DNA of 64,000 nt from Octopus bimaculoides. Lineage: Eukaryota. This document shows, one piece after another, positions 22,246 through 47,953 of the stretch. Below the pieces are notes generated by a model. It did no database searches. It saw only the letters and a program-made list of their open reading frames with translations, and was not told where the DNA came from. The stretch is taken from positions 2,993,803-3,057,802 of the forward strand of contig NC_069001.1 of the NCBI RefSeq assembly GCF_001194135.2, in the 5' to 3' direction. The translations under genes were made by a program, and so were the position numbers. Within the stretch, counting starts at the first letter, position 1. Each line of letters begins with the position of its first letter.

Positions 22246-22417
22246 TTATTCCAGGATTCCATCTTCGTACAAAAGAGCCTCGAGGTTTCCACTCCGTTTC
22301 AAAACACTTCGCAAGTCTGTAGAGCTTCCTTCGTTTTCGTCATTGAAAGCCAAAAGAGAACCGCTCACATCAGTGGCCTGCTGGAAAGTACTGAAATCTG
22401 GAGAACCTGATGGTCGC
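22246..22417 (-). CDS. MYO3: Myosin terminal coding exon (RPSGSPDF...DLRSVLKRSGNL...GILE*)
   Basis: Long pyrimidine acceptor ttttctctctag, phase 2 matching the 42808 donor, TAA stop. DLRSVLKRSG resembles the D(Y/F)RxLLRKT THDII actin-binding motif at the MYO3A C-terminus. Confidence 0.75.
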
Positions 22418-22796
22418 CTAGAGAGAAAAGTAGAGAGAAACAACACACTTAAGATTTTTCAAAAGCAGAGGGATACATATACATTATATTGGTCAGCACA
22501 CTTATTGAGAAATGTATATATATTTGTATTGAAGGTTTATTCCATTTGGAACGTATTAGAATACAAAATAGAGCTCGCTCACCCTTACCAAATAGCGAGT
22601 AGTATTATTACTGTCCCCGAAAGTAAATCTTTGATGCTAACACATCCAACTGTATATCACCTGGATCCCATTATACAGGTAAACCGTTGCTTAATTTAAA
22701 TCCTGTGTGTATGTGGATCTATGTTGTATCGAAACAGGTTTAGTGTTTATTAAGTAGCTGTCTAAATGTACTCCTTGTTCATTTAAGCAACCAAAT

Positions 22797-23700
22797 AACC
22801 CTGAACAAAAAGATTGTGTGTGAAGAAGTGGCCACAAGGCAGCCTTCACAGAGTAATCAAATTGCCATCATATCTTTATGGTAATTCCATTAATTGAAAT
22901 AAATTTAGATATCTTGATTTTATTAAAATTATTGATGATTTGGTAGCTCAGCAGGTAATGGGTGTTGCAAAGTGGTAATATAACAAGTGGAGGTTTCAAA
23001 TCTCTTCCAGGAATTACAAAGGTTCTTATTAAATAACATTTTTATTTACGCAACCAAATTTCCCTCAGCAAAAAGATTGTCTGTGTGAAGAAGGGGCCAC
23101 AAAGCAGCTTTGATATAGCAACCAAATCTCCTCCAAATCTTTNNNNNNNNNNNNNNNNNNNNNNNNNNNNNNNNNNNNNNNNNNNNNNNNNNNNNNNNNN
23201 NNNNNNNNNNNNNNNNNNNNNNNNNNNNNNNNNNNNNNNNNNNNNNNNNNNNNNNNNNNNNNNNNNNNNNNNNNNNNNNNNNNNNNNNNNNNNNNNNNNN
23301 NNNNNNNNNNNNNNNNNNNNNNNNNNNNNNNNNNNNNNNNNNNNNNNNNNNNNNNNNNNNNNNNNNNNNNNNNNNNNNNNNNNNNNNNNNNNNNNNNNNN
23401 NNNNNNNNNNNNNNNNNNNNNNNNNNNNNNNNNNNNNNNNNNNNNNNNNNNNNNNNNAACCCTGAACAAAAAGATTGTGTGTGAAGAAGTGGCCACAAGG
23501 CAGCCTTCACATAGTAACCAGATCTCCCTCGTATATTTATAGTAAATACAATATTTGAAGTAAATTTAAGTATCTTAATTTTCTCATAGAAATTGTTGCT
23601 GCTTTGGTGGCCCTTTGGTGGCCCAGTGTTTATAAGTAGTAACAAGACACCAGCAGAGGTATCTAATCTCTGCCAGGAATTACAGGGTGGTCTTATTAAA
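22797..23700. repeat. ~260-bp tandem repeat (at least 3 units, with an internal gap)
   Basis: ccctgaacaaaaagattgtgtgtgaagaagtggccacaaggcagccttcaca at 22798 and 23460; diverged copy at ~23061. Confidence 0.8.
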
Positions 23701-24998
23701 CATTTTCAATTTTTAACTCTAGAGATAAAAAAGAATAATAAATTTTAGTAAGACCCCTTAATGCAGGCCTTGACCCCTGCCCAGGATGTTCAATGTGGTT
23801 GTCTATGTCTCTACCCATGAGACCACCAAGACAACCAACATTAACGTATTAAATTAAGAGATATTTCAATCTATCATAACTAAAGATAAAAAACAAAAAC
23901 TCTCTCTCTCTCTTTCTCTCTCTCTATATGTATATATATATATATATATATCGTGGTACTCTGTCAGTTATGACGACGAGGGTTCCAGTTGATCCGGTCA
24001 ATGGAACAGCCCGCTCGTGAAATTAACGTGCAAGTGGTTGAGCATTCCACAGACACATGTACCCTTAGTGTAGTTCTCGGAGAGATTCAGCGTGACACAG
24101 AGTGTGAAAAGGCTGGCCCTTTGAAATACAGGCACAACAGAAACAGTGAGAGAAAGTTGTGGTGAGAGAGTACAACAGGGTTTGTTACCAACCCCTGCTG
24201 GAGTCTCGTGGAGCTTTAGGTGTTTCTGCTCAATAAACAATCACAACACCTGGTCGTATCGGAATTTAAGGTAAAAAAACAAAACTGGTGGATGCGCACG
24301 CATACAGGCACACAAGAACATTTCTGCTTAACAGAAGGCAGCTTAAAATTAAAGGGAGAGCATTCAATTTTTCAGAGTGAGACGAATATATTATTCAAGG
24401 GAGAGCACTTANNNNNNNNNNNNNNNNNNNNNNNNNNNNNNNNNNNNNNNNNNNNNNNNNNNNNNNNNNNNNNNNNNNNNNNNNNNNNNNNNNNNNNNNN
24501 NNNNNNNNNNNNNNNNNNNNNNNNNNNNNNNNNNNNNNNNNNNNNNNNNNNNNNNNNNNNNNNNNNNNNNNNNNNNNNNNNNNNNNNNNNNNNNNNNNNN
24601 NNNNNNNNNNNNNNNNNNNNNNNNNNNNNNNNNNNNNNNNNNNNNNNNNNNNNNNNNNNNNNNNNNNNNNNNNNNNNNNNNNNNNNNNNNNNNNNNNNNN
24701 NNNNNNNNNNNNNNNNNNNNNNNNNNNNNNNNNNNNNNNNNNNNNNNNNNNNNNNNNNNNNNNNNNNNNNNNNNNNNNNNNNNNNNNNNNNNNNNNNNNN
24801 NNNNNNNNNNNNNNNNNNNNNNNNNNNNNNNNNNNNNNNNNNNNNNNNNNNNNNNNNNNNNNNNNNNNNNNNNNNNNNNNNNNNNNNNNNNNNNNNNNNN
24901 NNNNNNNNNNNNNNNNNNNNNNNNNNNNNNNNNNNNNNNNNNNNNNNNNNNNNNNNNNNNNNNNNNNNNNNNNNNNNNNNNNNNNNNNNNNNNNNNNT

Positions 24999-25270
24999 TT
25001 GCCAAGGGAAGTTATCCTTCCCATCTTGATCTACGATACGTACGTACTCGAGTTTCAGGGTTATTTCCCTTCTTCAGCGTACGACAATCGCCGAGCTTCG
25101 ATGCAAAAGGCATCCCTTGGCAAATATATATAAGTTTTTCCAGTGAAATTATTCACTGATATCGAAAAACTGACAACAAGCAATGTTAAATCTCTGAACG
25201 AGGTATTAACAGTAACTGCACGATAAAGTGAAGTATATTTGCCACTTAAATGTGGCTGACCCCGAGGGGT
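24999..25270 (-). mobile_element. Structured HHR-bearing element (Penelope pseudo-LTR / retrozyme-like), truncated by an assembly gap
   Basis: Contains the HHR, an 11-bp inverted repeat (24999-25009 / 25113-25123) and hairpins at 25006-25022, 25100-25114, 25141-25158, 25241-25256 and 25259-25270. No ORF. Confidence 0.5.
25039..25083 (-). ncRNA. Minimal type I hammerhead ribozyme
   Basis: Minus strand reads CGTACG-CTGAAGA-AGGG(AAATAA)CCCT-GAAA-C(TCGA)G-TA-CGTACG: 6-bp stem I, intact CUGANGA and GAAA core, 4-bp stem II, palindromic ACTCGAGT stem III, GUA cleavage triplet. Confidence 0.85.
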
Positions 25271-25275
25271 GGATG

Positions 25276-28200
25276 TTACGTACGTTCGCTCGGACGTACG
25301 TACGTTTGTTTGTTTGTTCGTTCGATCTTTCTTTCGTTCACAAGTGCGTGCGTTCGTTCGTTTGTTCATTCTAATGTACGTACTATGTGCGTACGTTCTT
25401 TCGTTCTTTTCGGGCGTATGTACGGACGTTCTTTCGTTTGCTCGATCGTACGTACGTACGTTTGTTTCTTCGTACGTACGCACGTACGTTCTTTCGTTCG
25501 GTCGTTCTTTAGCTCTTTCCTTCGTTCGTTCTTTTGTTAGTTCATTCCTTCATATGTACGTTCGTACGTACATACGTAAGTTCGTCCGTTCGTATGTACG
25601 CAAGTACGTACGATCGTTCGTCCGCACGTACGTACGTACTTACGTAATTACGCACGTACGATCTTTCGTTCGTTCATTCGTACGTATGTGCGTATGTACG
25701 TTCAATCATTAGTTCCTTCGTACGTTCGTTCGTTCGTTCGTACGTTCGCTCGTTTATTCATTTCGTTTCTTCGTTCGTATGTTTCGTACGATATTTCGTT
25801 CTTGCGTGCGTACGTACGTTCGTTCTTTCGTTTGGTCCTTCGATCGTTTGGTCGTTCGTTCGTACATACGTACGCACGTTCGTTCGTACGTACGTACGTT
25901 CGTTCGTTCATTCCTTCATTCTTACGTATGAACGTACGTACAAACGTACCTTCGTTTGTTCGTACGTACACACGTACGTTCTATCATTCGGTTGTTCTTT
26001 CGTTCGTTCGTTCCTACGTGCGTGTGTACGTTCAATCGTCAGTTCCTTCGTATGTTCGTTCGTTCGTGCATACGTACGTACGTTCGATCGTTTATTCATT
26101 TCGTTTCTTCGTTCGTATGTACTTACTTACGTTCGTTCGTTCGGACGTACTTACGTGCGTACGTTCGTTCGTCCATACGTAATTACGTATGTACGTTCTT
26201 TCATTCGTTCGTAGGTGCGTATGTACCTTCAATCGTTAGTTCCTTCGTACGTTCGTTCGTTTATTCATTTCGTTTCTTCGTTCATTCGTTCGATCGTATG
26301 TACGTACGATCGTTCGTTCTTACGTACGTACTCTCGTTCGTTCCTTCGATCGTTTGGTCGTTCGTACGTACGCACGTTCGTTCGTGCGTGCGTACGTTCG
26401 TACGTACTTACGTTCGTTCATTCTTACGTATGAACGTACGTACAAACGTACTTAAGTACGTACTACGTAAGTACGTACGTTCGTTCGTATGTACATACGT
26501 AGGTATGTTCATTGTTTCGTTCGTTCGGACGTACGTACGTTCGCTCGGACGTACGTACGTTTGTTCGTTCGATCTTTCTTTCGTTCACAAGTGCGTACGT
26601 TCGTTTGTTCATTCTAATGTACGTACCACGTACGCTCGTTCGTTCTTTTGTTCGTTCGTACGTACCTACGTTCAGACGTACGTACGGACGTATGTACGCA
26701 CGTTCCTTAATTCGCTCGATCGTACGTACGTACGTTTGTTTCTTCGTACGTACGCACGTACGTTCTTTCGTTCAGTCGTTCGTTAGTTCTTTCCTTCGGT
26801 CGTTCTTTCCTTAGTTCGTTCCTTCGTATGTACGTTCGTGCGTACATACGTAAGTACGAACGTACGTTCGTTCGTTCGTATGTACGTACGTACGATCGTT
26901 TATACATACGTACGTTCGTTCTTTCGTTTGTTCCTTCGATCGTTCGTTCGGACGTACGTACGTTCGCACGTTCGCTCGCTCGGACGTACGTACGTTTGTT
27001 TGTTTGTTCGTTCGATCTTTCTTTCGTTCACAAGTGCGTACGTTCGTTTGTTCATTCTAATGTACGTTCGTTTGTACGTACGTAAGTACGAACGTACGTC
27101 CGTTCGTTCGTACGTACGTACGTACGTTCGTTCTTTCGTTCGTTCGTTTGTCCGCACATACGTACGTTTGTTCGTTCGTACCTACGTACGTAATTACGAT
27201 CGTTCTTTCGTATGTTCGTACGTTCGCTCGTTTATTCATTTCGTTTCTTCGTTCATTCGTTCGTATGTACGTACGATCGTTCGTTCTTACGTACGTACGT
27301 TCGTTCTTTCGCTCGTTCGTTCGTTTGTAAATACGTACGTTCGTTCGTTTATTCATTTCGTTTCTTCGTTCGTTCGTATGTACGTACGATCGTACGTTCT
27401 TACGTACGTACCTACGTTCGTTCGTTTATTCATTTCGTTTCTTCTTTCATTCTGTCGTATGTGCGTACGATCGTTCGTTCTTACGTACGTACGTGCGTAC
27501 GTTCGTTCCTTCGATCGATCGTTCGGACGTACTTACGTGCGTACGTTCGTTCATACGAACGTACGTTCGTTCATACGAACGTACGTTCGTTCGTTTATTC
27601 ATTTCGTTTCTTCGTTCATTTGTTCGTTCGTTCGTATGTACGTACGATTGTACGTTCTTACGTACGTTCCTACGTTCGTTTGTTTATTCATTTCGTTTCT
27701 TCGTTCATTCGTTCGTTCTTACGTACGTGAGTACGTTCGTTCCTTTGGTCGTTCGTTCGTTCGTGCGTACGTTCGTTCATTCCTTCATTCTTACGTATGA
27801 ACGTACGTACAAACGTATGAACGATCGTACGTACATACATAGGAACGAACGAACGCACGTACCTTCGTTTGTTCGTTCTTTCGTTCGGTCGTTCCTTAGT
27901 TCTTTCGTACGTTCGTTCTTTCGCTAGTTCGTTCCTTCGTATGTACGTTCGTTTGTACGTACATACGTAAGTACGTACTACGTAAGTACGTTCGTTCGTT
28001 CGTATGCACGTACGTACGTTCGTTGTTTCGTTCGTTCTTTCGATCGTTCGGTCGTTCGTTCGGACGCACGTACGTTTGTTTGTTTGTTCGTTCGATCTTT
28101 CTTTCGTTCACAAGTGCGTACGTTCGTTCGTTCGTTTATTCATTCTAATGTACGTACGTACGTACGCTCGTTCGTTCTTTTGTTCATTCGTACGTACCTA

Positions 28201-31200
28201 CGTTCGGACGTACGGACGTATGTACGCACGTTCCTTAATTCGATCGTACGTACGTACGTTTCTTTCTTGGTACGTCGGCACGTACGTTCTTTCGTTCGTT
28301 AGTTCGTTCCTTCGTATGTACGTTCGTTTGAACGTTTGTACGTACATACGTAAGTAAGTACGTACGTACGTCCGTGCGTTCGTTCGTATGTACGTACGTA
28401 CGTTCGTTCTTTCGTTCGTTCTTTCGTTCGGTCATTCGTTAGTTCTTTCCTTCGGTCGTTCTTTCGTTAGTTCGTTCCTTCGTATGTACGTTCGTGCGTA
28501 CATACGTAAGTACGAACGTACGTTCGTTCGTTCGTACGTAGATCGTTCGTACGTACGTACGTTCGTTCTTTCGATCGTTCGTTCGGACGTACGTACGTTC
28601 GCTTGGACGTACGTACGTTTGTTTGTTTGTTCGTTTGATCTTTCTTTCGTTCACAAGTGCGTACGTTCGTTCATTCTAATGTACGTACTACGTACGTACG
28701 TACGCTCGTTCGTTCTTTTGTTCATTCGTACGTACCTACGTTCGGACGTACGTTCGTACGTACGGACGTATGTACGCACGTTCCTTAATTCGCTCGATTG
28801 TACGTACGTACGTTTCTTTCTTGGTACGTACGCACGTACGTTCTTTCGTTCGTTAGTTCTTTCCTTCGTTCATTCTTTCGTTAGTTCGTTCCTTCGTATG
28901 TACGTTCGTTTGAACGTTCGTACGTACATACGTAAGTACGTACGTACGTACGTGCGTTCGTTCGTATATACGTACGTACGTGCGTTCGTTCGTATATACG
29001 TACGTACGTACGATCGCTCGTACGTACGTACGTTCGTTCTCTCGTTCGATCGTTCGTTCGTTGTTTTGTCCGCACGCACGTACGTTCGTACCTACGTTCA
29101 GACGTACGTTCGTTCGTATGAACGCACGTTCCTTAATTCGCTCGATCGTGCGTACGTACATTTGTTTCTTCGTACGTACGCACGTACGTTCTTTCGTTCG
29201 TTTGTTCTTTCCTTAGTTCGTTCCTTCGTTTGAACGTTCGTACGTACATACGTAAGTACGTACGTACGGCCGTGCGTTCGTTCGTATATACGTACGTAAG
29301 TACGATCGCTCGTACGTACGTTCGTTCTCTCGTTCGTTCCTTCGATCGTTCGTTCGTTCTTTCGTCCGCACGAAGGTACGTTCGTACCAACGTTCAGACG
29401 TACGTTCGTTCGTTTGTTCGTATGTACGCACGTTCCTTAATTCGCTCGATCGTACGTACGTTTCTTCGTTTGTTTCTTCGTACGTACGTTCTTTCGTTCG
29501 GTCGTTCGTTAGTTCTTTCCTTCGGTCGTTCTTTCGTTAGTTCGTTCCTTCGTATGTACGTTCGTGCGTACACACGTAAGTACGAACGTACGTTCGTTCG
29601 TTCGTATGTACGGACGTACGTAGATCGTTCGTACGTACGACCGTTCGTACGTACGTACGTTCGTTCTTTCGTTCGTTCCTTCGATCGTTCGTTCGGACGT
29701 ACGTACGTTCGCTTGGACGTACGTACGTTTGTTTGTTTGTTCGTTTGATCTTTCTTTCGTTCACAAGTGCGTACGTTCGTTTGTTCATTCTAATGTACGT
29801 ACGTACGTACTATCGTTCGTTCTTTTGTTCGTTCGTACGTACCTACGTTCAGACGTACGTTCGTTTGATCGTTTGTACGTACGGACGTATGTACGCACGT
29901 TCCTTAATTCTCGCGATCGTACGTACGTACGTATGTTCTTTCGTTCGATCGTTTGTTAGTTCTTTCCTTCGATCGTTCTTTCCTTAGTTCGTTCCTTCGT
30001 AATTACCTTCGTTTGTACGTTCGTGCGTACATACGTAAGTACGAACGTACTTTCGTTCTTTCGTTCGTTCGTTCGTCCGCACGTGCTTACGTTTGTTTGT
30101 TCGTACCTACGTACGTAATTACGATCGTATGTTCGTACGTTCGCTCGTTTATTCATTTCGTATCTTCGTTCATTCGTTCGTATGTACGTACGATCGTTCG
30201 TTCGCTCGGACGTACGTACGTTTGTGTGTTTGTTCGTTCGATCTTTCTTTCGTTCACAAGTGCGTACGTTCGTTCGTTTGTTCATTCTAATGTACGTATT
30301 ACGTACGTACGTACGCTCGTTTGTTCTTTTGTTCATTCGTACGTACGTACGTACGGACGTATGTACGCACGTTCCTTAATTCGCTCGATCGTACGTACGT
30401 ACGTTTCTTTCTTGGTACGTACGTTCTTTCGTTCGGTAGTTCGTTAGTTCTTTCCTTCGTTCGTTCTTTCTTTAGTTCATTCCTTCGTATGTACGTTCGT
30501 TCTTTTGTTCGTTCGTTCGTACGTACCTACGTTCAGACATACGTTCGATCGTACGTACGGACGTATGTACGCACGTTCCTTAATTCGCTCGATCGTACGT
30601 ACGTTTGTTTCTTCGTACGTAAGTACGTACCTACGTTCGTTCGTTCATATATGCGTACGATCGTTCGTTCTTACGTACGTGCGTACGTTCGTTCCTTTGG
30701 TCGTTCGTTCGTACACACGTACGCATGTTCGTGCTTGCGTACGTTCGTTAGTACTTACGTTCGTTCATTCCTTCATTCTTACGTATGAACGTACGTACAA
30801 ACGTACCTTCGTTTGTTCGTTGTGTCGTTTGTTCGTTCGTTCGTTTCTTCGTACGTACACACGTACGTTCTTTCGTTGGGTCGTTCCATAGTTCTTTCGT
30901 TCGTTCGTTCTTTCGCTAGTTCGTTCCTTCGTATGTACGTTCGTTTGTACGTTCTTACGTAAATACGTAAGTACGTACTACGTAAGTACGTTCGTTCGTT
31001 CGTATGTACGTACGTACGTTCGTTGTTTCGGTCGTTCGTTCGGACGTACGTACGTTTATTTGTTTGTTCGTTCGATCTTTCTTTCGTTCACAAGTGCGTA
31101 CGTTCGTTCGTTTATTCATTCTAATGTACGTAATATATACGTACGTACGCTCGTTCGTTCTTTTGTTCATTCGTACGTACGGACGTATGTACGCACGTTC

Positions 31201-34200
31201 CTTAATTCGCTCGATCGTACGTACGTACGTTTCTGTCTTGGTACGTTCTTTTGTTCGGTCGTTCGTTAGTTCTTTTCTTCGTTCGTTAGTTCGTTCGTAC
31301 GTACGTACGTTCGTTCTTTCGTTCGTTCCTTCGATCGTTCGTTAGTTCGTTCGTACGTACGTACGTTCGTTCTTTCGTTCGTTCNNNNNNNNNNCTTCGA
31401 TCGTTCGGTCGTTCGTTCGTCCGCACGCACGTACGTTCGTACCTACGTACGTACGTTCGTACCTACGTACGTACGTTCGTACCTACGTACGTACGTTCGT
31501 TCGGACGTACTTACGCACGTACGTACGTTCGTTCGGACGTACTTACGCACGTACGCTCGTTCGTTCGTTCGTACGTACCTACCTTTCAGACGTACGTTCG
31601 TTCGTTCGTACGTACGGACGTATGTACGCACGTTCCTTAATTCGCTCGATCGTACGTACGTACGTTTGTCTCTTCGTGCGTACGTTCTTTCCTTCGGTCC
31701 TTCTTTCGTTAGTTCGTTCCTTCGTATGTACGTTCATTTGTACGTACGTAAGTACGAACGTACGTACGTTCGATCGTTCGTTCGGACGTACGTACGTTCG
31801 CTCGGACGTACGTACGTTTGTTTGTTCGTTCGATCTTTCTTTCGTTCACAAGTGCGTACGTTCGTTTGTTCATTCTAATGTACGTACGTACGTACGTACG
31901 CTCGTTTGTTCTTTTGTTCGTTCGTACGTACCTACGTTCAGGCGTACGTTCGTTCGTTCGTTCTTACGTACGGACGTATGTACGCACGTTCCTTAATTCG
32001 CTCGATCGTACGTACGTACATTTGTTTCTTCGTACGTACGTTCTTTCGTTCGTTAGTTCTTTCCTTAGTTCGTTCCTTCGTTTGAACGTTCGTACGTACA
32101 TACGTAAGTACGTACGTACGTCCGTGCGTTCGTTCGTATATACGTACGTACGTACGATCGCTCGTACGTACGTACGCTTGTTCTCTCGTTCGTTCCTTCG
32201 ATCGTTCGTTCGTTCTTTCGTCCGCACGTGCGTACGTTTGTTCGTTCGTACCTACGTACGTAATTACGATCGTATGTTCGTACGTTCGCTCGTTTATTCA
32301 TTTCGTATCTTCGTTCATTCGTTCGTATGTACGTACGATCGTTCGTTCTTACGTACGTTCGTTCTTTCGGTCGTTCGTTCGATCGTTCGGACGTACTTAC
32401 GTGCGTACGTTCGTTCGTACATACGTACGTCCGTTCGTTTATTCATTTCGTTTCTTCGTTCATTCGTTCGTTCGTTCGTATGTACGTACGATCGTACGTT
32501 CTTACGTACGTACCTACGTTCGTTCGTTTATTCATTTCGTTCATTCGTTCGTTCGTATGTACGTACGATCGTACGTTCTTACGTACGTACCTACGTTCGT
32601 TCGTTTATTCATTTCGTTTCTTCGTTCATTCTGTCGTATGTTCGTACGATCGTTCGTTCTTGCGTACGTTCGTTCTTTCGCTCGTGCGTACGTTCGTTCG
32701 TACGTACGTACGTTCGTTCGGGTATTCATTTCGTTCATTCGTTCGTTCGTATGTACGTACGATCGTACGTACCTACGTTCGTTCGTTTATTCATTTCGTT
32801 TCTTCGTTCATTCGTTCGTATGTGCGTACGATCGTTCGTTCTTACGTACGTGCGTACGTTCGTTCTTTTGTTCGTTCCTTTGATCGTTTGGTCGTTTGGT
32901 CGTTCGGTCGTACACACGTTCGTTCGTGCGTGCGTCTGTTCGTACGTACTTACGTTCGTTTATTCCTTCATTCTTACGTATGAACGTACGTACAAACGTA
33001 CCTTCGTTTGTTCGTTCGTTCGTTTCTTCGTACGTATGCACGTACGTTCTTTCGTTCGGTCGTTCGTTAGTTCTTTCCTTCGGTCGTTCTTTCCTTAGTT
33101 CGTTCCTTCGTATGTACGTTAGTTCGTACACACGTACGCACGTTCGTTCGTGCGTGCGTACGTTCGTACGTACTTACGTTCGTTCATTCCTTTATTCTTA
33201 CGTATGAACGTACGTACAAACGTACCTTCGTTTGTTCGTTGTGTCGTTTGTTCGTTCGTTCGTTCGTTCCTTCGATCGTTCGGTCGTTCGTACGTTCGCT
33301 CGGACGTACGTACGTTTGTGTGTTTGTTCGTTCGATCTTTCTTTCGTTCACAAGTGCATACGTTCGTTCGTTTGTTCATTCTAATGTACGTACTACGTAC
33401 GTACGTACGCTCGTTCGTTCTTTTGTTCATTCGTACGTACCTACGTTCGGACGTACGTACGTACGTAAGTACGCACGTTCCTTAATTCGCTCGATCGTAC
33501 GTACGTACGTTTCTTTCTTGGTACGTACGCACGTATGTTCTTTCGTTCGTTCGTTCTTTCGTTAGTTCGTTCCTTCGTATGTACGCTCGTTTGAACGTTC
33601 GTACGTACATACGTAAGTACGTACGTACGTCCGTGCGTTCGTTCGTATATACGTACGTACGTACGATCGCTCGTACGTACGTTCGTTCTCTCGTTCGTTC
33701 CTTCGATCGTTCGTTCGTTCTTTCGTCCGCACGCACGTACGTTCGTACCTACGTTCAGACGTACGTTCGTTCGTATGTACGCACGTTCCTTAATTCGCTC
33801 GATCGTACGTACGTACGTTTGTTTCTTCGTACGTACGTTCTTTCGTTCGGTCGTTCATTAGTTCTTTCCTTCGGTCGTTCTTTCGTTAGTTTGTTCCTTC
33901 GTATGTACGTTCGTGCTTACATAGTACATTCGTTCTTTCGTATGTACGGACGTACGTAGATCGTTCGTACGTACGATCGTTCGTACGTACGTACGTTCGT
34001 TCTTTCGTTCGTTCCTTCCGACGTACGTACGTTCAGACGTACGTACGTTCAGACGTACGTTCGTTCGTACGTACGGACGTATGTACGCACGTTCCTTAAT
34101 TCTCTCGATCGTACGTACGTACGTATGTTCTTTCGTTCGATCGTTCGTTAGTTCTTTCCTTCGGTCGTTCTTTCCTTAGTTCGTTCCTTCGTATGTACCT

Positions 34201-37200
34201 TCGTTTGTACGTTCGTGCGTACATACGTAAGTACGAACGTACGTCCGTTCGTTCGTACGTACGTTCGTTCTTTTGTTCGTTCGTTCGTCCGCACGTGCGT
34301 ACGTTTGTCCGTTCGTACCTACGTACGTATTTACGATCGTTCTTTCGTATGTTCGTACGTTCGCTCGTTTATTCATTTCGTTTCTTCGTTCATTCGTTCG
34401 TATGTACGTACGATCGTTCGTTCTTACGTACGTGCGTACTTTCGTTCTTTCGCTCGTTCGTTCGATCGTTCGGATGTACTTATTTACGTGCGTACGTTCG
34501 TTCGTACATACGTACGTTCGTTCGTTTATTCATTTCGTTTCTTCGTTCATTCGGTCGTATGTGCGTACGATCGTTCGTTCTTACGTACGTGCGTACGTTC
34601 GTTCTTTCGCTCGTTCGTTCGATCGTTCGGACGTACTTACGTGCGTACGTTCGTTCATACGTACGTACGTTCGTTCGTTTATTCATTTCGTTTCTTCGTT
34701 CATTCGTTCGTTCGTATGTACGTACGATCGTACGTTCTTACGTACGTACCTACGTTCGTTCGTTTATTCATTTCGTTCATATGTGCGTACGATCGTTCGT
34801 TCTTACGTACGTGCGTACGTTCGTTCCTTTGGTCGTTCGTTCGTACACACGTACGCACGTTCGTGCTTGCGTACGTTCGTACGTACTTACGTTCGTTCAT
34901 TCCTTCATTCTTACGTATGAACGTACGTACAAACGTACCTTCGTTTGTTCGTTGTGTCGTTTGTTCGTTTCTTCGTACGTACACACGTACGTTCTTTCGT
35001 TCGGGCGTTCCATAGTTCTTTGGTTCGTTCGTTCTTTCGCTAGTTCGTTCCTTCGTATGTACGTTCGTTTGTACGTTCTTACGTACATACGTAAGTACGT
35101 ACTATGTAAGTACGTTCGTTCGTTCGTATGTACGTACGTACGGTCGTTGTTTCGTTCGTTCGGTCGTTCGTTCGGACGTACGTACGTTTATTTGTTTGTT
35201 CGTTCGATCTTTCTTTCGTTCACAAGTGCGTACGTTCGTTCGTTTATTCATTCTAATGTACGTAATACGTACGTACGCTCGTTCGTTCTTTTGTTCATTC
35301 GTACGTTCGGACGTACGTACGGACGTATGTACGAACGTTCCTTAATTCGCTCGATCGTACGTACGTACGTTTCTGTCTTGGTACGTACGCACATACGTTC
35401 TTTCGTTCGGTCGTTCGTTAGGTCTTTCCTTCGTTCGTTCTTTCGTTAGTTCGTTCATTCGTATGTACGTACGTACGTACGTTCGTTCCTTCGGTCGTTC
35501 GTCCGCACGCACGTACATTCGTACCTACGTACGTACGTTCGTTCGGACGTACTTACGCACGTACGCTCGTTCGTTCGAACGTACCTACCTTTCAGACGTA
35601 CGTTCGTTCGTTCGTACGTACGGACGTATGTACGCATGTTCCTTAAATCGCTCGATCGTACGTACGTACGTTTGTTTCTTCTTGCGTACGTTCTTTCGTT
35701 CGGTCGTTCGTTAGTTCTTTCCTTCGGTCGTTCTTTCGTTAGTTCGTTCCTTCGTATGTACGTTCGTTTGTATGTACGTAAGTACGAACGTACGTACGTT
35801 CGTTCTTTCGTTCGTTCCTTCGATCGTTCGTTCGGACGTACGTACGTTCGCTCGGACGTACGTACGTTTGTTTGTTTGTTCGTTCGATATTTCCTTCGTT
35901 CACAAGTGCGTACGTTCGTTTGTTCATTCTAATGTACGTACGTACGTACGCTTGTTTGTTCTTTTGTTCGTTCGTACGTACCTACGTTCAGGCGTACGTT
36001 CGTTCGTTCGTTCTTACGTACGGACGTATGTACGCACGTTCCTTAATTCGCTCGATCGTACGTACGTACGTTTGTTTCTTCGTACATACGCACGTACGTT
36101 CTTTCGTTCGTTTGTTCGTTAGTTCTTTCCTTAGTTCGTTCCTTCGTATGTATGTTCGTGCGTACATACGTAAGTACGAACGTACGTCCGTTCGTTCGTA
36201 CGTACGTTCGTTCGTACGTACGTACGTTCGTTCTTTCGTTCGTTCGTTCGTTCGTCCGCACGTACGTACGTTTGTTCGTTCGTACCTACGTACGTAATTA
36301 CGATCATTCTTTCGTATGTTCGTTCGTACGTTCGCTCGTTTATTCATTTCGTTTCGTCGTTCGTTCGTTCGTATGTACGTACGAGCGTACGTTCTTACGT
36401 ACGTACCTAAGTTTGTTCGTTTATTCATTTCGTTTCTTCGTTCATTCGGTCGTATGTGCGTACGATTGTTCGTTCTTACGTACGTGCGTACGTTCATTCT
36501 TTCGCTCGTTCTTTCGATCGTACTTTCGTGCGTACGTTCGTTCGTACATACGTACGTTCGTTCGTACATACGTACGTTCGTACATACCTACGTTCGTTCG
36601 TTTATTTATTTCGTTTCTTCGTTCATTCGTTCGTTCGTTCGTATGTACGTACGATCGTACGATCTTACGTACGTACCTACGTTCGTTCTTTCGTTGGTTC
36701 CTTCGATCATTCGTTCGTACGTTCCTCCGCACGCTCGTACGTTCGTACCTACGTACGTACATTCGTTCGTTCGGACGTACTTACGCACGTACGCTCGTTC
36801 ATACGTACCTACGTTCAGACGTAAGTTCGTTCGTATGTACGCACGTTCCTTAATTCGCTCGATCGTACGTACGTACGTTTGTTTCTTGGTATGTACGCAC
36901 GTTCTTTCCTTCGGTTGTTCGTTAGTTCTTTCCTTCGGTCGTTCTTTCTTTAGTTCGTTCCTTCGTATGTACGTTCGTGCATACATACGTAAGTACGAAC
37001 GTACGTTCGTTCGTTCGTATATACGCACGTACGTACGATCGTTCGTACGTACGTACGTTCGCTCGGACGTACGTTCGCTCGGACGTACGTACGTTTGTTT
37101 GTTTGTTCGTTCGATCTTTCTTTCGTTCACAAGTGCGTACGTTCGTTCGTTTGTTCATTCTAATGTACGTACTACGTACGTACGTACGCTCGTTCGTTCC

Positions 37201-40200
37201 TTTGTTCATTCGTACGTACCTACGTTCGTACGCACGTTCCTTAATTCGCTCGATCTTACGTACGTACGTTTCTTTCTTGGTACGTACGCACGTACGTTCT
37301 TTCGTTCGTTAGTGCTTTCCTTCGTTCGTTCTTTCGTTAGTTCGTTCCTTCGTATGTACGTTCGTTTGAACGTTCGTACGTACATACGTAAGTACGTCCG
37401 TGCGTTCGTTCGTATATACGTACGTACGTACGTTCGTTCTTTCGTTCGTTCCTTCGGTCGTTCGTTCGTTCTTTCGTCGGCACGCACGTACGTTCGTACC
37501 TACGTACGTACGTTCGTTCGTTCGGACGAACTTACGCACGTACGCTCGTTCTTTCGTACGTACCTACGTTCAGACGTACGTTCGTCCGTACGTACGGACG
37601 TATGTACGCACGTTCCTTAATTCGCTCGATCGTACGTACGTACGTTTGTTTCTTCGTACGTACATACGTACGTTCGTTCGTTTTTTAATTTCGTTTCTTC
37701 GTTCATTCGTTCGTATGTGCGTACGATCGTTCGTTCTTACGTACGTGCATACGTTCGTTCTTTTGTTCGTTCCTTTGATCGTTTGGTCGTTCGTTCGTTC
37801 GTGCGTGCGTACGTTCGTACGTACTTACTTTCGTTCATTCCTTCATTCTTACGTATGAACGTACGTACAAACGTACCTTCGTTTGTTCGTTCGTTCGTTG
37901 TTTCGTTCGGTCGTTCGTTCGGACGTACGTACGTTTGTTTGTTTGTTCGTTCGATCTCTCTTTCGTTCACAAGTGCGTACGTTCGTTCGTTTGTTCATTC
38001 TAATGTACGTACTACGTACGTACGTACGTACGTACGCTCGTTCGTTCTTTTGTTCATTCGTACGTACGGACGTATGTACGCACGTTCCTTAATTCGCTCG
38101 ATCGTACGTACGTACGTACGTTCTTTCCTTCGGTCGTTCTTTCGTTACTTCGTTCCTTCGTATGTACGTTCGTTTGAACGTTCGTACGTACATACGTAAG
38201 TACGTACGAACGTCCGTTCGTATGTACGTATGTTCGTTCTTTCGTTCGTTCGTTCGGGCGTTCGTTCGTACGTTCGTCCGCACGCACGTACGTTCGTACC
38301 TACGCACGTACGCTCGTTCGTTCGTACGTACCTACGTTCAGACCTACGTTCGTTCGTTTGTTCGTACGTACGGACGTATGTACGCACGTTCCTTAATTCG
38401 CTCGATCGTACGTACGTACGTTCTTTCATTCGGTCATTCGTTAGTTCTTTCCTTCGGTCGTTCTTTCGTTAGTTCGTTCCCTCGTATGTACGTTCGTGCG
38501 TACATACGTAAGTACGAACGTACGTTCGATCGTTCGTACGTACGTTCGTTCTTTCGTTCGTTCCTTCGATCGTTCGTTCGGACGTACGTAAGTACGTTTG
38601 TTTGTTTGTTCGTTCGTACGTACCTACGTTCAGACGTACGTTCGTTCGTTCGTAAGTACGGACGTATGTACGCACGTTCCTTAATTCGCTCGATCGTACG
38701 TACGTTTGTTTCTTCGTACGTATGCATGCACGTTCTTTCGTTCGGCCGTTCGTTAGTCCTTTCCTTCGGTCGTTCTTTCTTTAGTTCGTTCCTTCGTTTG
38801 TACGTTCGTGCGTACATACGTAAGTACGAACGTACGTCCGTTCTTTCGTACGTACGTACGTTCGTTCTTTCGTTCGTTCGTCCGCACGTACGTACGTTTG
38901 TTCGTACGTTATCTCGTTTATTCATGTACGTACCTACGTTCGTTCGTTTATTCATTTCGTTTCTTCGTTCATTCGGTCGTATGTGCGTACGATCGTTCGT
39001 TCTTACGTACGTGCGTACGTTCGTTCTTTCGCTCGCTCGTTCGTTCGGACGTACTTACGTGCGTGCGTACGTTCGTTCGTACATATGTACGTTCGTTCGT
39101 TTATTCATTTCGTTTCTTCGTTCATTCGTTCGTTCGTTCGTATGTACGTACGATCGTACGTTCTTACGTACGTACCTACGTTCGTTCGTTTATTCATTTT
39201 GTTTCTTCGTTCATTCGTTGCTATGTGCGTACGATCGTTCGTTCTTACGGACGTGCGTACGTTCGTTCTTTCGTTCCTTCCCTTGGTCGTTCGTTCTTTC
39301 GTTCGTTCCTTTGGTCGTTCGTTCGTACACACGTACGCACGTTCGTTCGTGCGTGCGTACGTTCGTACGTACTTACGTTCGTTCATTCCTTCATTCTTAC
39401 GTATGAACGTACGTACAAACGTACCTTCGTTGTGTCGTTTGTTCGTTTCTTCGTACGTACACACGAACGTTCTTTCGTTCGGTCGTTCCTTAGTTCTTTC
39501 GTTCGTTCGTTCTTTCGCTAGTTTGTTCGGTCGTTCCTTAGTTATTTCGTTCGTTCGTTCTTTCGTTAGTTCGTTCCTTCGTATGTACGTTCGTTTGTAC
39601 GTTCTTACGTACATACGTGAGTACGTACTACGTAAGTACGTTCGTTCGTTGTTTCGTTCGTTCCTTCGATCGTTCGGACGTACGTACGTTCGCTCGGATG
39701 TACGTACCTTTGTTTGTTTGTTCGTTCGATCTCTCTTTCGTTCACAAGTGCGTACGCTCGTTCGTTCTTTTGTTCATTCGTACGTACCTACGTTCGGACG
39801 TACGTTCGTACGTACGGACGTATGTACGCACGTTCCTTAATTCGCTCGATCGTACGTACGTACGTTTCTTTCTTGGTACGTACGCACGTACGTTCTTTCG
39901 TTCGGTCGTTCGTTAGTTCTTGCCTTCGTTCGTTCTTTCGTTAGTTCGTTCCTTCGTATGTACGTTCGTTTGAACGTTCGTACGTACATACGTAAGTACG
40001 TACTTACGTCCGTTCGTTCCTTCGTATGTACGTACGTACGTACGATCGCTCGTACGTACGTACGTTCGTTCTTTCGTTCGTTCCTTCGATCGTTCGTCCG
40101 TACGTTCGTCCGCACGCACGTACGTTCGTACCTACGTACGTACGTTCGTACCTACGTACGTACGTTCGTTTGTTCGGACGTACTTACGCACGTACGCTCG

Positions 40201-42084
40201 TTCGTACGTACCTACGTTCGCTCGTACGTACGGACGTATGTACGCACGTTCCTTCGTTTGCTCGATCGTACGTACGTACGTTTGTTTCTTCGTACGTACG
40301 CACGTACGTTCTTTCGCTCGGTCGTTCGTTAGTTCATTCCTTCGTATGTACGTTCGTTCTTTCGTATTTACGCACGTACGTACGATCGTTCGTACGTAAG
40401 TACGTTCGTTCTTTCGTTCGTTCCTTCGATCGTTCGTCCGCACGTACGTACGTTCGTTCGGACGTAATTACGTACGGACGTTCTTTCGTTCCTTCGTTCG
40501 TACATATGTGCATATGTTCGTTCAATCATTAGTTCCTTCGTACGTACGTTCGTTCGTTCGTTTATTCATTTCGTTTCTTCGTTCATTCGTTCGTATGTTT
40601 CGTACGATCGTTCGTTCTTGCGTGCGTACGTAAGTTCGTTCTTTCGTTCGGTCCTTCGATCGTATGGTCGTTCGTTTGTACACACGTACGCACGTTCGTT
40701 CGTTCATTCCTTCATTCTTACGTATGAACGTACGTACAAACGTACCTTCCTTTGTTCGCTGTGTCGTTTGTTTGTTCGTTCGTTTCTTCGTACGTACACA
40801 CGTACGTTCTTTCGTTCGGTCGTTCTTTCGCTAGTTCGTTCCTTCGTATGTACGTTCGTTTGTGCGTTCTTACGCACATACGCAAGTACGAACGTACGTA
40901 CGTACGTTCGTTCGTATGTACTTACGTACGTGCGTTCTATGTTTCGTTCGTTCCTTCGATCGTTCGTTCGTTCGGACGTTCATTTGTTTGTTCGTTCGAT
41001 CTTTCTTTCGTTCACAAGTGCGTACGTTCGTTCGTTTGTTCGTTCATTCTAATGTAAGTACTACGTACGCACGTACGTTCGTTCGTTCTTTTCTTCGTTC
41101 GTACGTATCTACGTTCGTTCGTTTATTCATTTCGTGTCTTCGTTCATTCGTTCGTATGTGCGTGCGATCGTTCGTTCTTACGTGCGTACGTACGCTCGTT
41201 CTTTTGTTCGTTCCTTCGATCTTTTGGTCGTTCGTTCGTACATACGTACAAACGTACCTTCGTTTGTTCATTTGTTCGTTGTGTCGTTTGTTCGTTCGAT
41301 CGTTTCTTCGTACGTACACACGTACGTTCTTTTGTTCGGTCGTTCGTTAGTTCTTTCGTTCGTTCGTTCCTTCGTATGTACGTTCGTTTGTACGTTCTTA
41401 CGTACATACGTAAGTACGGACGTACGTGAGTACGTAAGCACGTTCGTACGTACGGCCGTTCGTTCGTTAGTACGTTCGTATGTACGTACGTACGTTCGTT
41501 GTTCGTTCGTTCCTTCGATCGTTCGGCCGTTCGTTCGGTCGTTCGTTCGTTCGTTCAGACGTACGTACGTTCGCTCGGACGTACGTACGTTCGTTTGTTT
41601 GTTCGTTCGATCTTTCTTTCGTTTACAAGTGTGTCCGTTCGTTCGTTCGTTTGTTCATTCTAATGTACGTACTACGTACGTACGTGCGCTCGTTCGTTCT
41701 TTTGTTCGTTCGTGCGTGCCTAGGTACGTTCGTTCGTACGGACGGACGTATGTGCTCGCGTTCCTTAGTTCGCTCGATCGTACGTACGTACGTTTGTTCC
41801 TTGATACGTACGCACGTTCGGTCGTTCGTTATTTCTTTCCTTAGTTCGTTCCTTCGTATGTACGTTCGTTTGAACGTTCGTACGTACATACGTAAGTACG
41901 TACGTACGTATGATCGCTCGTACGTACGTACGTTCGTTCTTTCGTTCGTTTCTTCGATCGTTCGGTCGTTCGTTCGTCCGCACGCACGTACGTTCGTTCG
42001 TTCGTCCGCACGCACGTACGTTCGTTCGTTCGTACCTACGTACGTACATACGTTCGTTCTTTCGTTCGATCGTTCGTTCGTTCG
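25276..42084. repeat. ~16.8-kb compound (TACG/TTCG) CpG-rich satellite with higher-order repeats, in the last myosin intron
   Basis: Built from tacg/ttcg/ttctttcg units with recurring landmarks (ttcacaagtgcg, ttccttaattcgctcgatcg, tttattcatttcgtttcttcg, cttacgtatgaacgtacgtacaaacg). One 10-N gap at 31385. Confidence 0.97.
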
Positions 42085-42273
42085 TTATATATAAAAATAA
42101 ATATATATATAAAAATAAATAAATATGTATACCTATGTACACACATACATGTATATATATGTATGTGTAGACATATATGTATATACATGTACACACACGC
42201 ATATATATACACTTGCATACATATAAACCTATACACACACACATATATATATATGTATATATANNNNNNNNNN

Positions 42274-42324
<51 letters not shown>

Positions 42325-42528
42325 TATATACGTAAGGAGCAAAATAGCTTCTTCTAAAATCTCTAAAAAATATATAATTAACAACAATAGTAAACAATAA
42401 GTTTTTTTTTATGACTATAACATGGCTGTTCTATAAAGAATTATGTTACTACATTTTAACACCAATATGTATACATACATACCTATATATGTGTGTGTGT
42501 GTATATATATATATATACACACACAAAT

Positions 42529-42624
<96 letters not shown>

Positions 42625-42708
42625 CTGGAGCCTGGTGTTGCCATCCGGTTTCACCAGTCCTCAGTCAAATCGTCCAACCCATGCTAGCATGGAAAGCGGA
42701 CGTTAAAC

Positions 42709-42759
<51 letters not shown>

Positions 42760-42807
42760 ACACTACTACTCCTTAAACAAAGAAATAAATATTATTTTCC
42801 TTCTCAC

Positions 42808-43110
42808 CTTTTCATTATTGGGGTCTGAATATGCGAAACAGAACCCATTTCAAATAAATTAATTCTGTCTCGTACTGCAGGCGCATCTAATTCGGAATAG
42901 TCGATCATTTCTTCATCACCAGACTCCGAGAAATCTGATTCCTCATCGGACTCATACATTGTCATGTGACTGAACATCATCGACAGGATCCTTGCAGTCA
43001 CTTGGGTCTCACATTTCTTTGCTAATTCTGTTTTGGTGTTCTCTTCAAAGAATTCGTCTAATTCCTTCTCACCTTCGTCATCTATTTCATCAGCAAATCT
43101 AGGGACGGGG
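42808..43110 (-). CDS. MYO3: Myosin tail acidic exon, 303 bp (PVPRFADEIDDEGEKELDEFFEE...AVRDRINLFEMG...)
   Basis: tttcttttccag acceptor, AG|GTGAGA donor, phase 2-2; lies within ORF 42804..43154. Confidence 0.8.
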
Positions 43111-43746: not shown

Positions 43747-43833
43747 AGTGGTCCACTTTCCTTTCTCTTTTGTTTGGCTGCTTCAATGAGACAGGAGAGT
43801 TGGTCTTCTTTGGGTTGCCCTTCTTCAGTAGTC
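43747..43833 (-). CDS. MYO3: Myosin tail exon, 87 bp (TTEEGQPKEDQLSCLIEAAKQKRKESGP)
   Basis: ttgttttag acceptor, GTGAGT donor, phase 2-2. Confidence 0.75.
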
Positions 43834-47554: not shown

Positions 47555-47953
47555 ATATATATACACATCGTGGCACTCTGTTGATTATGATGACAACGGT
47601 TCCATTTGATTTGATCAACGGAACAACCTGCTCGTGACATTAACGTGCAAGTGGCTGAGCACTCCACAGACATGTGTACCCTTAACATAGGTCTCGGGGA
47701 AATTCAGCATGACACAGAGTGTGACAAGGCTGGCCCCTTTGAAATACAGGTGCAACAGAAACAGGAAGAAAGAGTGAGAGAAAGTTGTGGTGGAAGAGTA
47801 CAGCAGGGTTCACCACTGCTCCCTGCCAGAGCCTCGTGGAGTTTTAAGTGTTTTTGCTTAATAAACATCCACAACGCCTGGTCTGGGAATTGAAACCATG
47901 ATCCTATGACCGTGAGTCCGCTGCTCTAACCACTGGGCCATTGCGCCTCCACA
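47555..47953 (-). mobile_element. tRNA-derived SINE family 2; copies also at ~4480-4695 and ~23955-24270
   Basis: Shared text gtgacacagagtgtgacaaggctggcccctttgaaatacagg...gctcaataaaca...ccactgggccattgcgcctccac (tRNA-like head on the minus strand). Confidence 0.8.

What the first reader, a model, noticed from the sequence alone, without database searches (positions are those of the whole stretch)
25039..25083. Intact minimal hammerhead ribozyme, sense to the myosin pre-mRNA, inside its last intron
Seen: the minus strand gives CGUACG-CUGAAGA-AGGG(AAAUAA)CCCU-GAAA-C(UCGA)G-UA^CGUACG, with every conserved core nucleotide, paired stems I and II, and a GUA cleavage triplet. Established: metazoan minimal type I HHRs with a very short palindromic stem III (here ACUCGAGU) are associated with Penelope-like elements and tandem retrozyme/satellite repeats and typically work as dimers. 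Inference: because the myosin gene is transcribed on this strand, the ribozyme would be in the pre-mRNA just before the terminal THDII-like exon, where cleavage could affect splicing of a ~20-kb intron or release intronic RNA.
Basis: partly seen in the sequence, partly recalled or inferred. Interest (0 to 1): 0.8.

Follow-up and report, generated by a model that had tools for sequence, protein, structure and literature searches.

The report
Retroelement hammerhead ribozyme in myosin intron
The hammerhead ribozyme motif is real, but it is one of about 200 near-identical copies of a small non-coding retroelement spread through this octopus genome, and this copy landed by chance in the last intron of a myosin-III gene, so it is an ordinary transposon relic rather than a device of the myosin gene.

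Summary
The 45-nt motif at 25083..25039 (minus strand) is exactly as described. It has every invariant hammerhead core base, a 6-bp helix I, a 4-bp helix II and a palindromic helix III (ACUCGAGU), with a GUA cleavage site between 25045 and 25044. It is not chance. It sits in a 282-bp copy (24998-25279) of a 351-bp non-coding repeat, and at least 197 copies of the ribozyme occur genome-wide (47 exact; control 0). An older sister family of about 358 bp carries the same ribozyme, with compensatory changes in helix I and in the helix III palindrome and no change at any core base. The insertions look like Penelope-like-element (PLE) products: variable 5' truncation, two preferred 3' ends about 45 bp apart, (TA)n targets and inverted 5' partial copies. 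It is therefore a retrozyme-like, PLE-mobilised element. The gene context is also right: a canonical 20,390-nt GT..AG last intron (42807..22418) of a myosin-IIIb-like gene, sense strand, 2.6 kb upstream of the 3THDII-like exon. A regulatory role is unsupported, because the copy is young (2% diverged), carries a single ribozyme, and has the architecture that needs a dimer. No Rfam hammerhead model detects it. The 10.1-11.1 pair is A-U, not G-C.

The parts
25039..25083 (-). Type I hammerhead ribozyme motif. Helix I 5' strand 25083-25078; CUGAAGA box 25077-25071; helix II hairpin AGGG/AAAUAA/CCCU 25070-25057; GAA 25056-25054; helix III ACUCGAGU 25053-25046; A17 at 25045; predicted cleavage between 25045 and 25044; helix I 3' strand 25044-25039.
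   Evidence: Identical to the family consensus at 45/45 positions. Helices supported by covariation.
24998..25279 (-). One 5'-truncated copy of the 351-bp non-coding repeat (unit positions 117-351 followed by 1-47). Its 3' end is lost in the assembly gap.
   Evidence: BLAST of the unit against the window finds only this copy. It shows 6 differences in 282 nt from the consensus. Predicted fold -89.7 kcal/mol, z = -5.7.
25078..25124 (-). 5' strand of the extended helix I (the long closing helix of the repeat unit).
   Evidence: The distal 5-bp segment covaries (C-G versus U-A).
24998..25044 (-). 3' strand of the extended helix I. This would be the 5' end of the RNA after cleavage.
24412..24997 (.). 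Assembly gap of 586 N. It hides the 3' end of the copy, which in other copies lies at unit position about 173 or 218 and is followed by (TA)n.
22418..42807 (-). Last intron (20,390 nt, GT..AG) of the myosin-IIIb-like gene. It contains the repeat copy and the 16.8-kb tetranucleotide array.
   Evidence: tblastn of the Argonauta hians myosin-IIIb-like protein and P0004. Donor AAAAG|GTGAG and acceptor CTCTAG|G keep the frame as ..PIMKR|RPSGSPDF...
42808..43109 (-). Penultimate coding exon of myosin III.
22249..22417 (-). Terminal coding exon, ending ..DLRSVLKRSGNLEALLYEDGILE* (3THDII-like C-terminal motif).
25279..42086 (.). 16.8-kb degenerate (CGTT/CGTA)n array. It abuts the 5' end of the repeat copy. 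It is context, not part of the element.

Best explanation
The motif is the self-cleaving ribozyme of a small (351-bp unit), non-coding, retrozyme-like retroelement that Penelope-like-element (PLE) machinery copies into AT-rich or microsatellite DNA. The proposed life cycle is as follows. Source loci carry at least two units in tandem, and their transcripts hold two ribozymes 351 nt apart. The two ribozymes pair through the palindrome ACUCGAGU to form a double hammerhead with an 8-bp helix III. Each cuts after GUA. This releases a unit-length RNA whose two ends are held together by a helix of about 45 bp that extends helix I, ready for ligation into a circle. A PLE reverse transcriptase then starts at either of two internal sites (unit positions about 173 and about 218) on a nicked (TA)n target. 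It copies back through the ribozyme, giving 5'-truncated insertions. The window holds one such insertion. It is young, 5'-truncated at unit position 117, and landed in the sense orientation in the last intron of a myosin-III gene. There it is most likely a passenger. With one ribozyme and a 2-bp helix III it should cleave the pre-mRNA weakly, if at all. Shown here: the sequence, the copy number, the insertion anatomy, the covariation, the predicted folds and the intron position. Inferred: catalysis, circular RNA, the PLE as mobiliser, and neutrality for the gene.
For: Motif and rarity by chance. Repeat family: the 281 nt around the motif match many loci at 90-99% identity, with copies in a 351-bp period. 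The 45-mer matches 197 places within 3 mismatches, 47 of them exact, against 0 for the control. Insertion anatomy in 40 loci: 5' starts are scattered; 3' ends cluster at unit position 168-173 (15 copies) and 212-218 (8 copies); nearly all are followed by (TA)n; several carry an inverted partial copy at the 5' end. The sister family shows the same pattern, with 3' ends at about 171-178 and about 214-227. These features match the published PLE hallmarks of partial tandems, inverted 5' copies, microsatellite bias and an optional 30-40-bp 'tail' between two internal reverse-transcription start sites (PMC8557442; PMC11167929). The element is non-coding: every frame on both strands of the circular unit has at least 3 stop codons, and GC is 42%. 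Constraint on the ribozyme: the family 1 and family 2 consensus ribozymes differ at 13 of 45 positions, none of them a core base. All differences fall at N7, H17, the loops, 10.1/11.1, or as compensatory pairs (chance about 0.005-0.01). In 63 distinct ribozymes, 91.8% of cells pair, against 16-50% when partners are slid. There are 73 double-change cells against 30.6 +/- 7.8 in shuffles (0 of 500 shuffles reach the observed value). Pairs 11-53 (G-C/A-U), 12-52 (U-A/U-G/C-G), 3-59 (C-G/U-A) and 42-45 in the palindrome (U-A/U-G/C-G) all covary. RNAalifold independently recovers helix I in the ribozyme register. Dimer use: two copies co-fold best (-44.7 kcal/mol against 2 x -19.2) as a domain-swapped double hammerhead. 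Pair 42-45 cannot form in a monomer hairpin, yet it covaries. Unit RNA fold: -130 kcal/mol, z = -6.7, with the ends paired. Precedent: axolotl retrozymes of 353 bp have a 2-bp helix III plus tetraloop and a mismatch at the base of helix II. They cleave weakly as monomers and well as dimers (PMC7229834). Window copy: 6 differences in 282 nt from the consensus and a single ribozyme.
Against: No Rfam hammerhead model reports either family, even at E<=10. The same library does find other hammerhead families in this genome. Pair 10.1-11.1 is A-U here and C.A or A.A in the sister family, whereas G-C is described as highly conserved (PMC4209133). In the uncleaved window transcript a slipped (CGUA)n register is predicted to be 4.2 kcal/mol more stable than the ribozyme-competent fold. 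Genomic copies show only a modest deficit of mutations in the ribozyme (1.95% against 3.0%, p = 0.01), and that figure may carry sampling bias. No autonomous PLE with a matching terminal repeat was identified. No expression, circular-RNA or cleavage data exist. The 3' end of the window copy is hidden in a gap, so a second ribozyme there cannot be strictly excluded.
Confidence: 0.8

Rival explanations
1. Co-opted intronic ribozyme. This sense-strand copy cleaves the myosin-III pre-mRNA 2.6 kb upstream of the 3THDII exon. Cleavage would disfavour the distal terminal exon relative to the alternative proximal terminal exon, or would release an intronic RNA. This would parallel the conserved intronic hammerheads of amniotes.
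For: The copy is in the sense orientation inside a confirmed intron. The ribozyme matches the consensus at 45/45 positions. An alternative terminal exon at 43748-43897 is used by an O. sinensis isoform. Domesticated intronic hammerheads derived from retroelements are documented (PMC6155905).
Against: It is one of at least 197 dispersed near-identical copies. It is young (2.1% diverged), so its intactness needs no selection. It carries a single ribozyme of a dimer-dependent architecture. The ribozyme-competent fold is not the predicted minimum. No cross-species conservation could be shown. From my own knowledge, intronic ribozyme cleavage need not block splicing, because exons remain tethered to the polymerase (Dye et al. 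2006).
Confidence: 0.04
2. A hammerhead-shaped but catalytically dead element. On this reading the conserved helices and boxes are kept for another reason, such as recognition by the PLE reverse transcriptase or folding of the template RNA, and the RNA no longer self-cleaves.
For: Pair 10.1-11.1 is not G-C, and it is a mismatch in the older family. No Rfam hammerhead model scores either family. Metazoan PLE hammerheads showed low activity in vitro (PMC4209133). The covariation in helix I could equally be explained by the long closing helix.
Against: All core bases are unchanged between two families that are only 80% identical overall and 71% identical within the ribozyme. The palindrome covaries at a pair that matters only for a dimeric helix III. 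An axolotl ribozyme with a mismatch at the base of helix II is active.
Confidence: 0.12
3. Assembly artefact. The copy was misplaced or collapsed next to a gap and does not really lie in this intron.
For: A 586-N gap starts 41 nt from the motif. Many other copies also border gaps. The assembly is a gapped draft.
Against: The 5' junction with the unique local array is contiguous sequence. Gaps next to (TA)n-flanked repeats are expected and do not imply misplacement. The motif sequence itself occurs 47 times exactly in the genome.
Confidence: 0.03

Closest known systems
Metazoan non-LTR retrozymes (Cervera & de la Pena 2020, PMC7229834), especially axolotl Rtz_353 with HHR_Amex2
   Same: Both are non-coding units of about 350 bp with low GC (42% here) and one type I hammerhead per unit, arranged in tandem. 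[quoted passage not shown] Both are expected to depend on dimers. The unit RNA is strongly structured, with its ends paired.
   Different: Copies here are mostly partial dimers of 1.1-1.9 units; only 5 of 40 loci hold two ribozymes, and there are no long arrays. The insertion signature is overtly PLE-like: two 3' ends about 45 bp apart and (TA)n targets. Circular RNA and activity are untested. The host is a cephalopod, and I found no report of these elements in octopus in the searched library.
Hammerheads in the pseudo-LTRs of Penelope-like elements (Cervera & de la Pena 2014, PMC4209133; Frangieh et al. 2024, PMC11167929)
   Same: Both are associated with PLE-style insertions. Both have a palindromic helix III and a proposed dimeric mechanism. 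Both show internal reverse-transcription start sites that produce a 'tail'.
   Different: The element carries no reverse transcriptase or GIY-YIG ORF. Helix I is long, with a conserved internal loop, rather than the 4-5 bp of the min-HHR. G10.1-C11.1 is not kept. No homology to a specific PLE pseudo-LTR was shown.
Newt satellite 2 / Schistosoma Sm-alpha hammerheads (Rfam Hammerhead_1, RF00163)
   Same: Both have type I topology, a 6-bp helix I, a 4-bp helix II, a short palindromic helix III, and a repeat-borne origin.
   Different: This motif scores below E = 10 on RF00163 and on every other Rfam hammerhead model. Other families in the same genome pass the RF00163 cut-off.
Conserved intronic hammerheads of amniotes (RECK, CTCL, DTNB; de la Pena & Garcia-Robles 2010, reviewed in PMC6155905)
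   Same: Both are type I hammerheads of retroelement ancestry lying in the sense orientation within an intron.
   Different: The amniote examples are single, deeply conserved orthologous loci. This one is a young member of a multi-copy family with no evidence of conservation.

Membership tests
Hammerhead ribozyme, type I | Invariant core C3 U4 G5 A6 (N7) G8 A9 / G12 A13 A14 / A15.1-U16.1 / H17 | tested here: met
   The core is unchanged in the consensus of both families.
Hammerhead ribozyme, type I | Three helices around the core, with helix I open and helices II and III closed, supported by covariation | tested here: met
   91.8% of cells pair, 4 pairs covary, and 0 of 500 shuffles reach the observed value. 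RNAalifold recovers helix I in the correct register.
Hammerhead ribozyme, type I | G10.1-C11.1 pair at the base of helix II (near-universal but not absolute) | tested here: not met
   The pair is A-U in the window copy and in family 1, and C.A or A.A in family 2. An active precedent with a U.U mismatch exists in axolotl.
Hammerhead ribozyme, type I | Score at or above the Rfam gathering threshold (RF00163 or another hammerhead model) | tested here: not met
   No hit at the gathering threshold or at E<=10 on short stretches.
Hammerhead ribozyme, type I | Site-specific self-cleavage giving 5'-OH and 2',3'-cyclic phosphate ends | not testable with these tools
   This needs in vitro transcription or RNA end mapping.
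Non-LTR retrozyme | Non-coding unit of 150-450 bp, GC below 50%, one type I hammerhead per unit, in tandem copies | tested here: met
   The unit is 351 bp with 42% GC and stop codons in all frames. The tandem period is 351 bp, but most copies are partial dimers; 5 of 40 loci hold two ribozymes.
Non-LTR retrozyme | Expression as unit-length linear and circular RNA | not testable with these tools
   No transcriptome data were available. Indirect hints only: the ends are paired in the predicted fold, and family 2 has unit-length copies whose 5' and 3' ends coincide.
Penelope-like-element-mobilised insertion | Variable 5' truncation, partial tandems, inverted 5' partial copies, two alternative 3' ends ('tail'), and AT-rich or microsatellite targets | tested here: met
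   compared with PMC8557442 and PMC11167929.
Penelope-like-element-mobilised insertion | Sequence homology of the unit to the pseudo-LTR of an autonomous PLE in the same genome | not tested
Only incidental GIY-YIG and RT-like ORF fragments were seen near copies.
Domesticated intronic hammerhead | A single orthologous locus conserved across species | tested here: not met
   The multi-copy part was tested and fails: at least 197 copies, and this copy is 2.1% diverged. Orthology in other species could not be tested.

The most novel reading that the evidence does not exclude
The sense-strand intronic copy has been co-opted. Its ribozyme, perhaps pairing in trans with abundant transcripts of the same family, cuts the myosin-III pre-mRNA upstream of the 3THDII actin-binding exon. 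This would shift output toward isoforms that end at the proximal alternative terminal exon. It would be an invertebrate counterpart of the amniote intronic hammerheads.
Probability: 0.03. Interest if true: 0.65.

Novelty: new member of a known kind. Interest (0 to 1): 0.3.

Why it matters
For the myosin gene it probably does not matter; this is a passenger insertion. The family itself has modest value for three reasons. First, it appears to be an undescribed cephalopod retrozyme-like element that combines a hammerhead with the full PLE insertion signature, including the two-start 'tail'. That supports the recent proposal that animal retrozymes are non-autonomous PLE derivatives. Second, covariation at a pair that can form only in a dimeric helix III is sequence-level support for the double-hammerhead mechanism. 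Third, both families are invisible to every Rfam hammerhead model, because the base of helix II is not G-C. Rfam-based censuses, such as the 235 hammerheads reported in giant squid, therefore undercount these ribozymes.

Tried and rejected
1. Rfam scans at the gathering threshold on the whole window, and at E<=10 on three short stretches, gave no hammerhead hit.
2. Chance motif: rejected on family conservation and covariation.
3. Helix I as a by-product of the neighbouring (CGTA)n array: rejected. The CGTACG arms belong to the repeat unit in all copies, and the array abuts unit position 117, not the arms.
4. Coding potential or a rolling-circle ORF (351 = 3 x 117): rejected. Every frame has at least 3 stop codons.
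5. Pfam on the long + strand 'ORFs' at 26-42 kb gave nothing. They are translated microsatellite.
6. The 65-nt fragment folds best in a slipped register. In the cleaved unit the correct register is the minimum-energy fold. In the uncleaved window copy the correct register is +4.2 kcal/mol above the minimum.
7. Fetching the orthologous O. sinensis locus failed: no record was found.
9. The hammerhead-like strings at both ends of a mariner-like element in L006 were judged to be chance matches in terminal inverted repeats.
10. The mutation deficit in the ribozyme among genomic copies is weak (p = 0.01) and possibly biased. I give it little weight.

Full report
**Observation.** The minus strand at 25083..25039 reads CGUACG-CUGAAGA-AGGG-AAAUAA-CCCU-GAAA-CUCGAG-UA|CGUACG. 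All invariant hammerhead positions are present: C3 U4 G5 A6 G8 A9, G12 A13 A14, A15.1-U16.1 and H17 = A. Helix I has 6 bp and helix II has 4 bp closed by a 6-nt loop. Helix III is 2 bp plus a tetraloop, and together they form the palindrome ACUCGAGU. The predicted cut lies between 25045 and 25044. A descriptor scan of my own finds no other candidate in the window. It expects 0.015 hits per dinucleotide-shuffled window, and none of 200 shuffles reaches this helix quality. Two deviations from the textbook motif stand out. Pair 10.1-11.1 is A-U, not G-C. No Rfam hammerhead model reports the site, either at the gathering threshold or at E<=10 on a 211-nt stretch. A 586-N assembly gap starts 41 nt downstream in the RNA sense.

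**It is part of a repeat family.** The window is G000:C21:2993803-3057802 of a 2.34-Gb, 145,327-contig assembly. The best protein match of the local gene is 94% identical to an Octopus sinensis protein, so the genome is an Octopus or a close relative. The 281 nt around the motif match many loci at 90-99% identity (84 scored matches, 2,337 first-look candidates). The matches lie in a 351-bp register. The 45-mer itself occurs 197 times within 3 mismatches, 47 of them exact, against 0 for the reversed-pattern control. The window holds a single copy, consisting of unit positions 117-351 followed by 1-47 and then the gap. It differs from the family consensus at 6 of 282 positions, and the ribozyme is identical at 45/45. 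The unit has 42% GC and stop codons in every frame on both strands, even when read as a circle.

**Insertion anatomy.**
- In 40 loci, every copy crosses the 351|1 junction, which is the ribozyme site.
- 5' starts are scattered over the unit.
- 3' ends cluster at unit position 168-173 (15 copies) and 212-218 (8 copies). Almost all are followed directly by (TA)n.
- Several copies carry an inverted partial copy at the 5' end.
- Five loci hold two ribozymes exactly 351 nt apart.

These are the published hallmarks of Penelope-like-element (PLE) integration. They include partial tandems, inverted 5'-truncated copies and microsatellite bias (PMC8557442). They also include an optional 'tail' of a few tens of bp that arises from two adjacent internal reverse-transcription start sites (PMC11167929). 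The window copy departs in one respect. Its 5' junction abuts a 16.8-kb degenerate (CGTT/CGTA)n array rather than (TA)n, and its 3' junction is hidden in the gap.

**Evidence that the ribozyme is under constraint.** A chance neighbour in locus L046 revealed an older sister family. Its unit is about 358 bp, its copies are 85-89% identical to the L046 copy used as query, and it has 2,443 first-look candidates. Its consensus ribozyme is CACACG-CUGAUGA-CGGG-UCAAUA-CCCA-GAAA-CUCGGG-UC|CGUGUG. The two consensus units are 80% identical overall. The ribozymes differ at 13 of 45 positions, and none of the 13 is a core base. The differences fall at N7, H17, loop 2, 10.1/11.1, the helix III palindrome, and two compensatory pairs of helix I. 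The chance of missing the core in this way is about 0.005-0.01.

I tested a structure that I specified on 63 distinct ribozymes from both families:
- 91.8% of cells pair, against 16-50% when partners are slid.
- Double-change cells number 73, against 30.6 +/- 7.8 in shuffles (0 of 500 shuffles reach this).
- Four pairs covary: G-C/A-U, U-A/U-G/C-G, C-G/U-A in a distal segment of helix I, and U-A/U-G/C-G inside the palindrome.

These changes represent only a few independent events (two or three lineages), so the counts overstate the number of events. Still, every one of them preserves pairing. RNAalifold, given no structure, recovers helix I in the ribozyme register. The covarying palindrome pair would leave a 2-nt loop in a monomer hairpin, so it makes sense only in an intermolecular 8-bp helix III. 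Pair 10.1-11.1 is not conserved as a pair: it is A-U in family 1 and C.A or A.A in family 2. Among genomic copies the ribozyme is only slightly less mutated than the rest of the unit (1.95% against 3.0%, p = 0.01). That is expected if selection acts on the source copies only.

**Predicted folding.**
- Two 65-nt ribozyme segments co-fold best as a domain-swapped double hammerhead, at -44.7 kcal/mol against 2 x -19.2.
- The unit-length RNA that cleavage would produce folds at -130 kcal/mol (z = -6.7). Its two ends are joined by a helix of about 45 bp that continues helix I in the correct register. Family 2 folds the same way.
- In the uncleaved window copy a slipped (CGUA)n register is predicted to be 4.2 kcal/mol more stable than the ribozyme-competent fold.
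- The UGU/U internal loop of helix I and two A's of loop 2 are nearly invariant across families. This is compatible with a loop-loop contact, but I could not test it.

The architecture is therefore that of the 'canonical' metazoan type I hammerhead: helix I of 6 bp, helix II of 4 bp, and a short palindromic helix III (PMC4209133). It is not the stripped-down min-HHR.

**Gene context.** The minus strand encodes the end of a myosin head and IQ motifs at 59.5-63.6 kb. The gene is myosin-IIIb-like. The Argonauta hians protein and a second homologue map to exons ending at 43109-42807, and then to 22434-22249. The donor AAAAG|GTGAG and the acceptor CTCTAG|G join the frame as ..PIMKR|RPSGSPDF.., as in the homologues. 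This gives an intron from 42807 to 22418, which is 20,390 nt. The terminal exon ends ..DLRSVLKRSGNLEALL... That matches the C-terminal ..FR.LLRKT[GS].. motif of fish and clam class III myosins, which from my own knowledge is the 3THDII actin-binding motif. The ribozyme is therefore in the sense orientation, 17.8 kb into the last intron and 2.6 kb upstream of the terminal exon (gap sizes are nominal). An O. sinensis isoform ends instead at an exon homologous to 43748-43897.

**Interpretation.** The most likely account is a retrozyme-like, PLE-mobilised element. Its ribozyme processes multimeric transcripts as a dimer. The window copy is a recent, truncated, single-ribozyme passenger. Comparable elements are documented. 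Axolotl 353-bp retrozymes have a 2-bp helix III and a mismatch at the base of helix II. They cleave 6-22% per hour as monomers and efficiently as dimers (PMC7229834). A 2026 preprint argues that animal retrozymes derive from PLE pseudo-LTRs, and finds them depleted from introns in Xenopus. Nothing points to a role in myosin-III splicing, although I cannot exclude one. Orthologous loci were not retrievable and no RNA data were available.

**Limits.** Only incidental GIY-YIG and RT-like ORF fragments were seen near copies. Copy counts are lower bounds. Catalysis, circular RNA and mobilisation by a PLE are all inferences.

Noticed in passing
window 25279-42086: A 16.8-kb degenerate tetranucleotide array, (CGTT/CGTA)n on the + strand, at 68% match and with 77-157-bp higher-order repeats. 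It fills most of the myosin-III last intron and produces spurious long ORFs on the + strand.
   Followed up: partly
window 8690-9085 and 12044-12775 (+): Exons of an ankyrin-repeat plus SOCS-box (ASB-like) gene, convergent with the myosin gene.
   Followed up: partly
window 43748-43897 (-) and 50666-52078 (-): The first is an alternative terminal exon used by O. sinensis myosin-IIIb-like isoform X6. The second is a large serine-rich, apparently disordered tail exon present in that isoform but absent from the Argonauta model. Both point to alternative 3' ends, with or without the 3THDII motif.
   Followed up: partly
loci L021-L030 (elsewhere in the genome): Other hammerhead families pass the Rfam RF00163 cut-off. 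One is a 42-nt form (GUAC CUGAAGAG ACCC..GGGU CGAAAC AUGU GUU GUAC). Another is a ~105-nt form with a ~70-nt insertion in helix II. The first look gave 186,549 candidates, of which only 74 were scored.
   Followed up: no
loci L051-L080: Sister family of about 358-bp units. In 12 of 32 copies the 5' start lies at unit position 172-188, the same place as the proximal 3' end (~176). These are exactly unit-length copies, as expected from a circular or tandem template.
   Followed up: partly
L018 2456-2833 (-), L058 855-1517 (-), L022 2681-3046 (-): GIY-YIG endonuclease and PLE-like reverse transcriptase ORF fragments lie within about 1 kb of ribozyme-bearing repeats, often at the same (TA)n tracts. 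No linkage to the repeats was shown.
   Followed up: partly
L006 405 (+) and 2951 (-): Hammerhead-like strings (CTGATGACGAGCAATGACTCAGAAACATGTT) occur in the terminal inverted repeats of a mariner/Tc1-like element. The base of helix II is mismatched, and I judged them to be chance.
   Followed up: no
window 24001-24240, 4471-4611, 47707-47925 (-): Three copies of another short interspersed repeat that give similar pseudo-peptides (..KHLKLHE.PAG....CCTLPPQLSLT..). They are unrelated to the ribozyme element.
   Followed up: no
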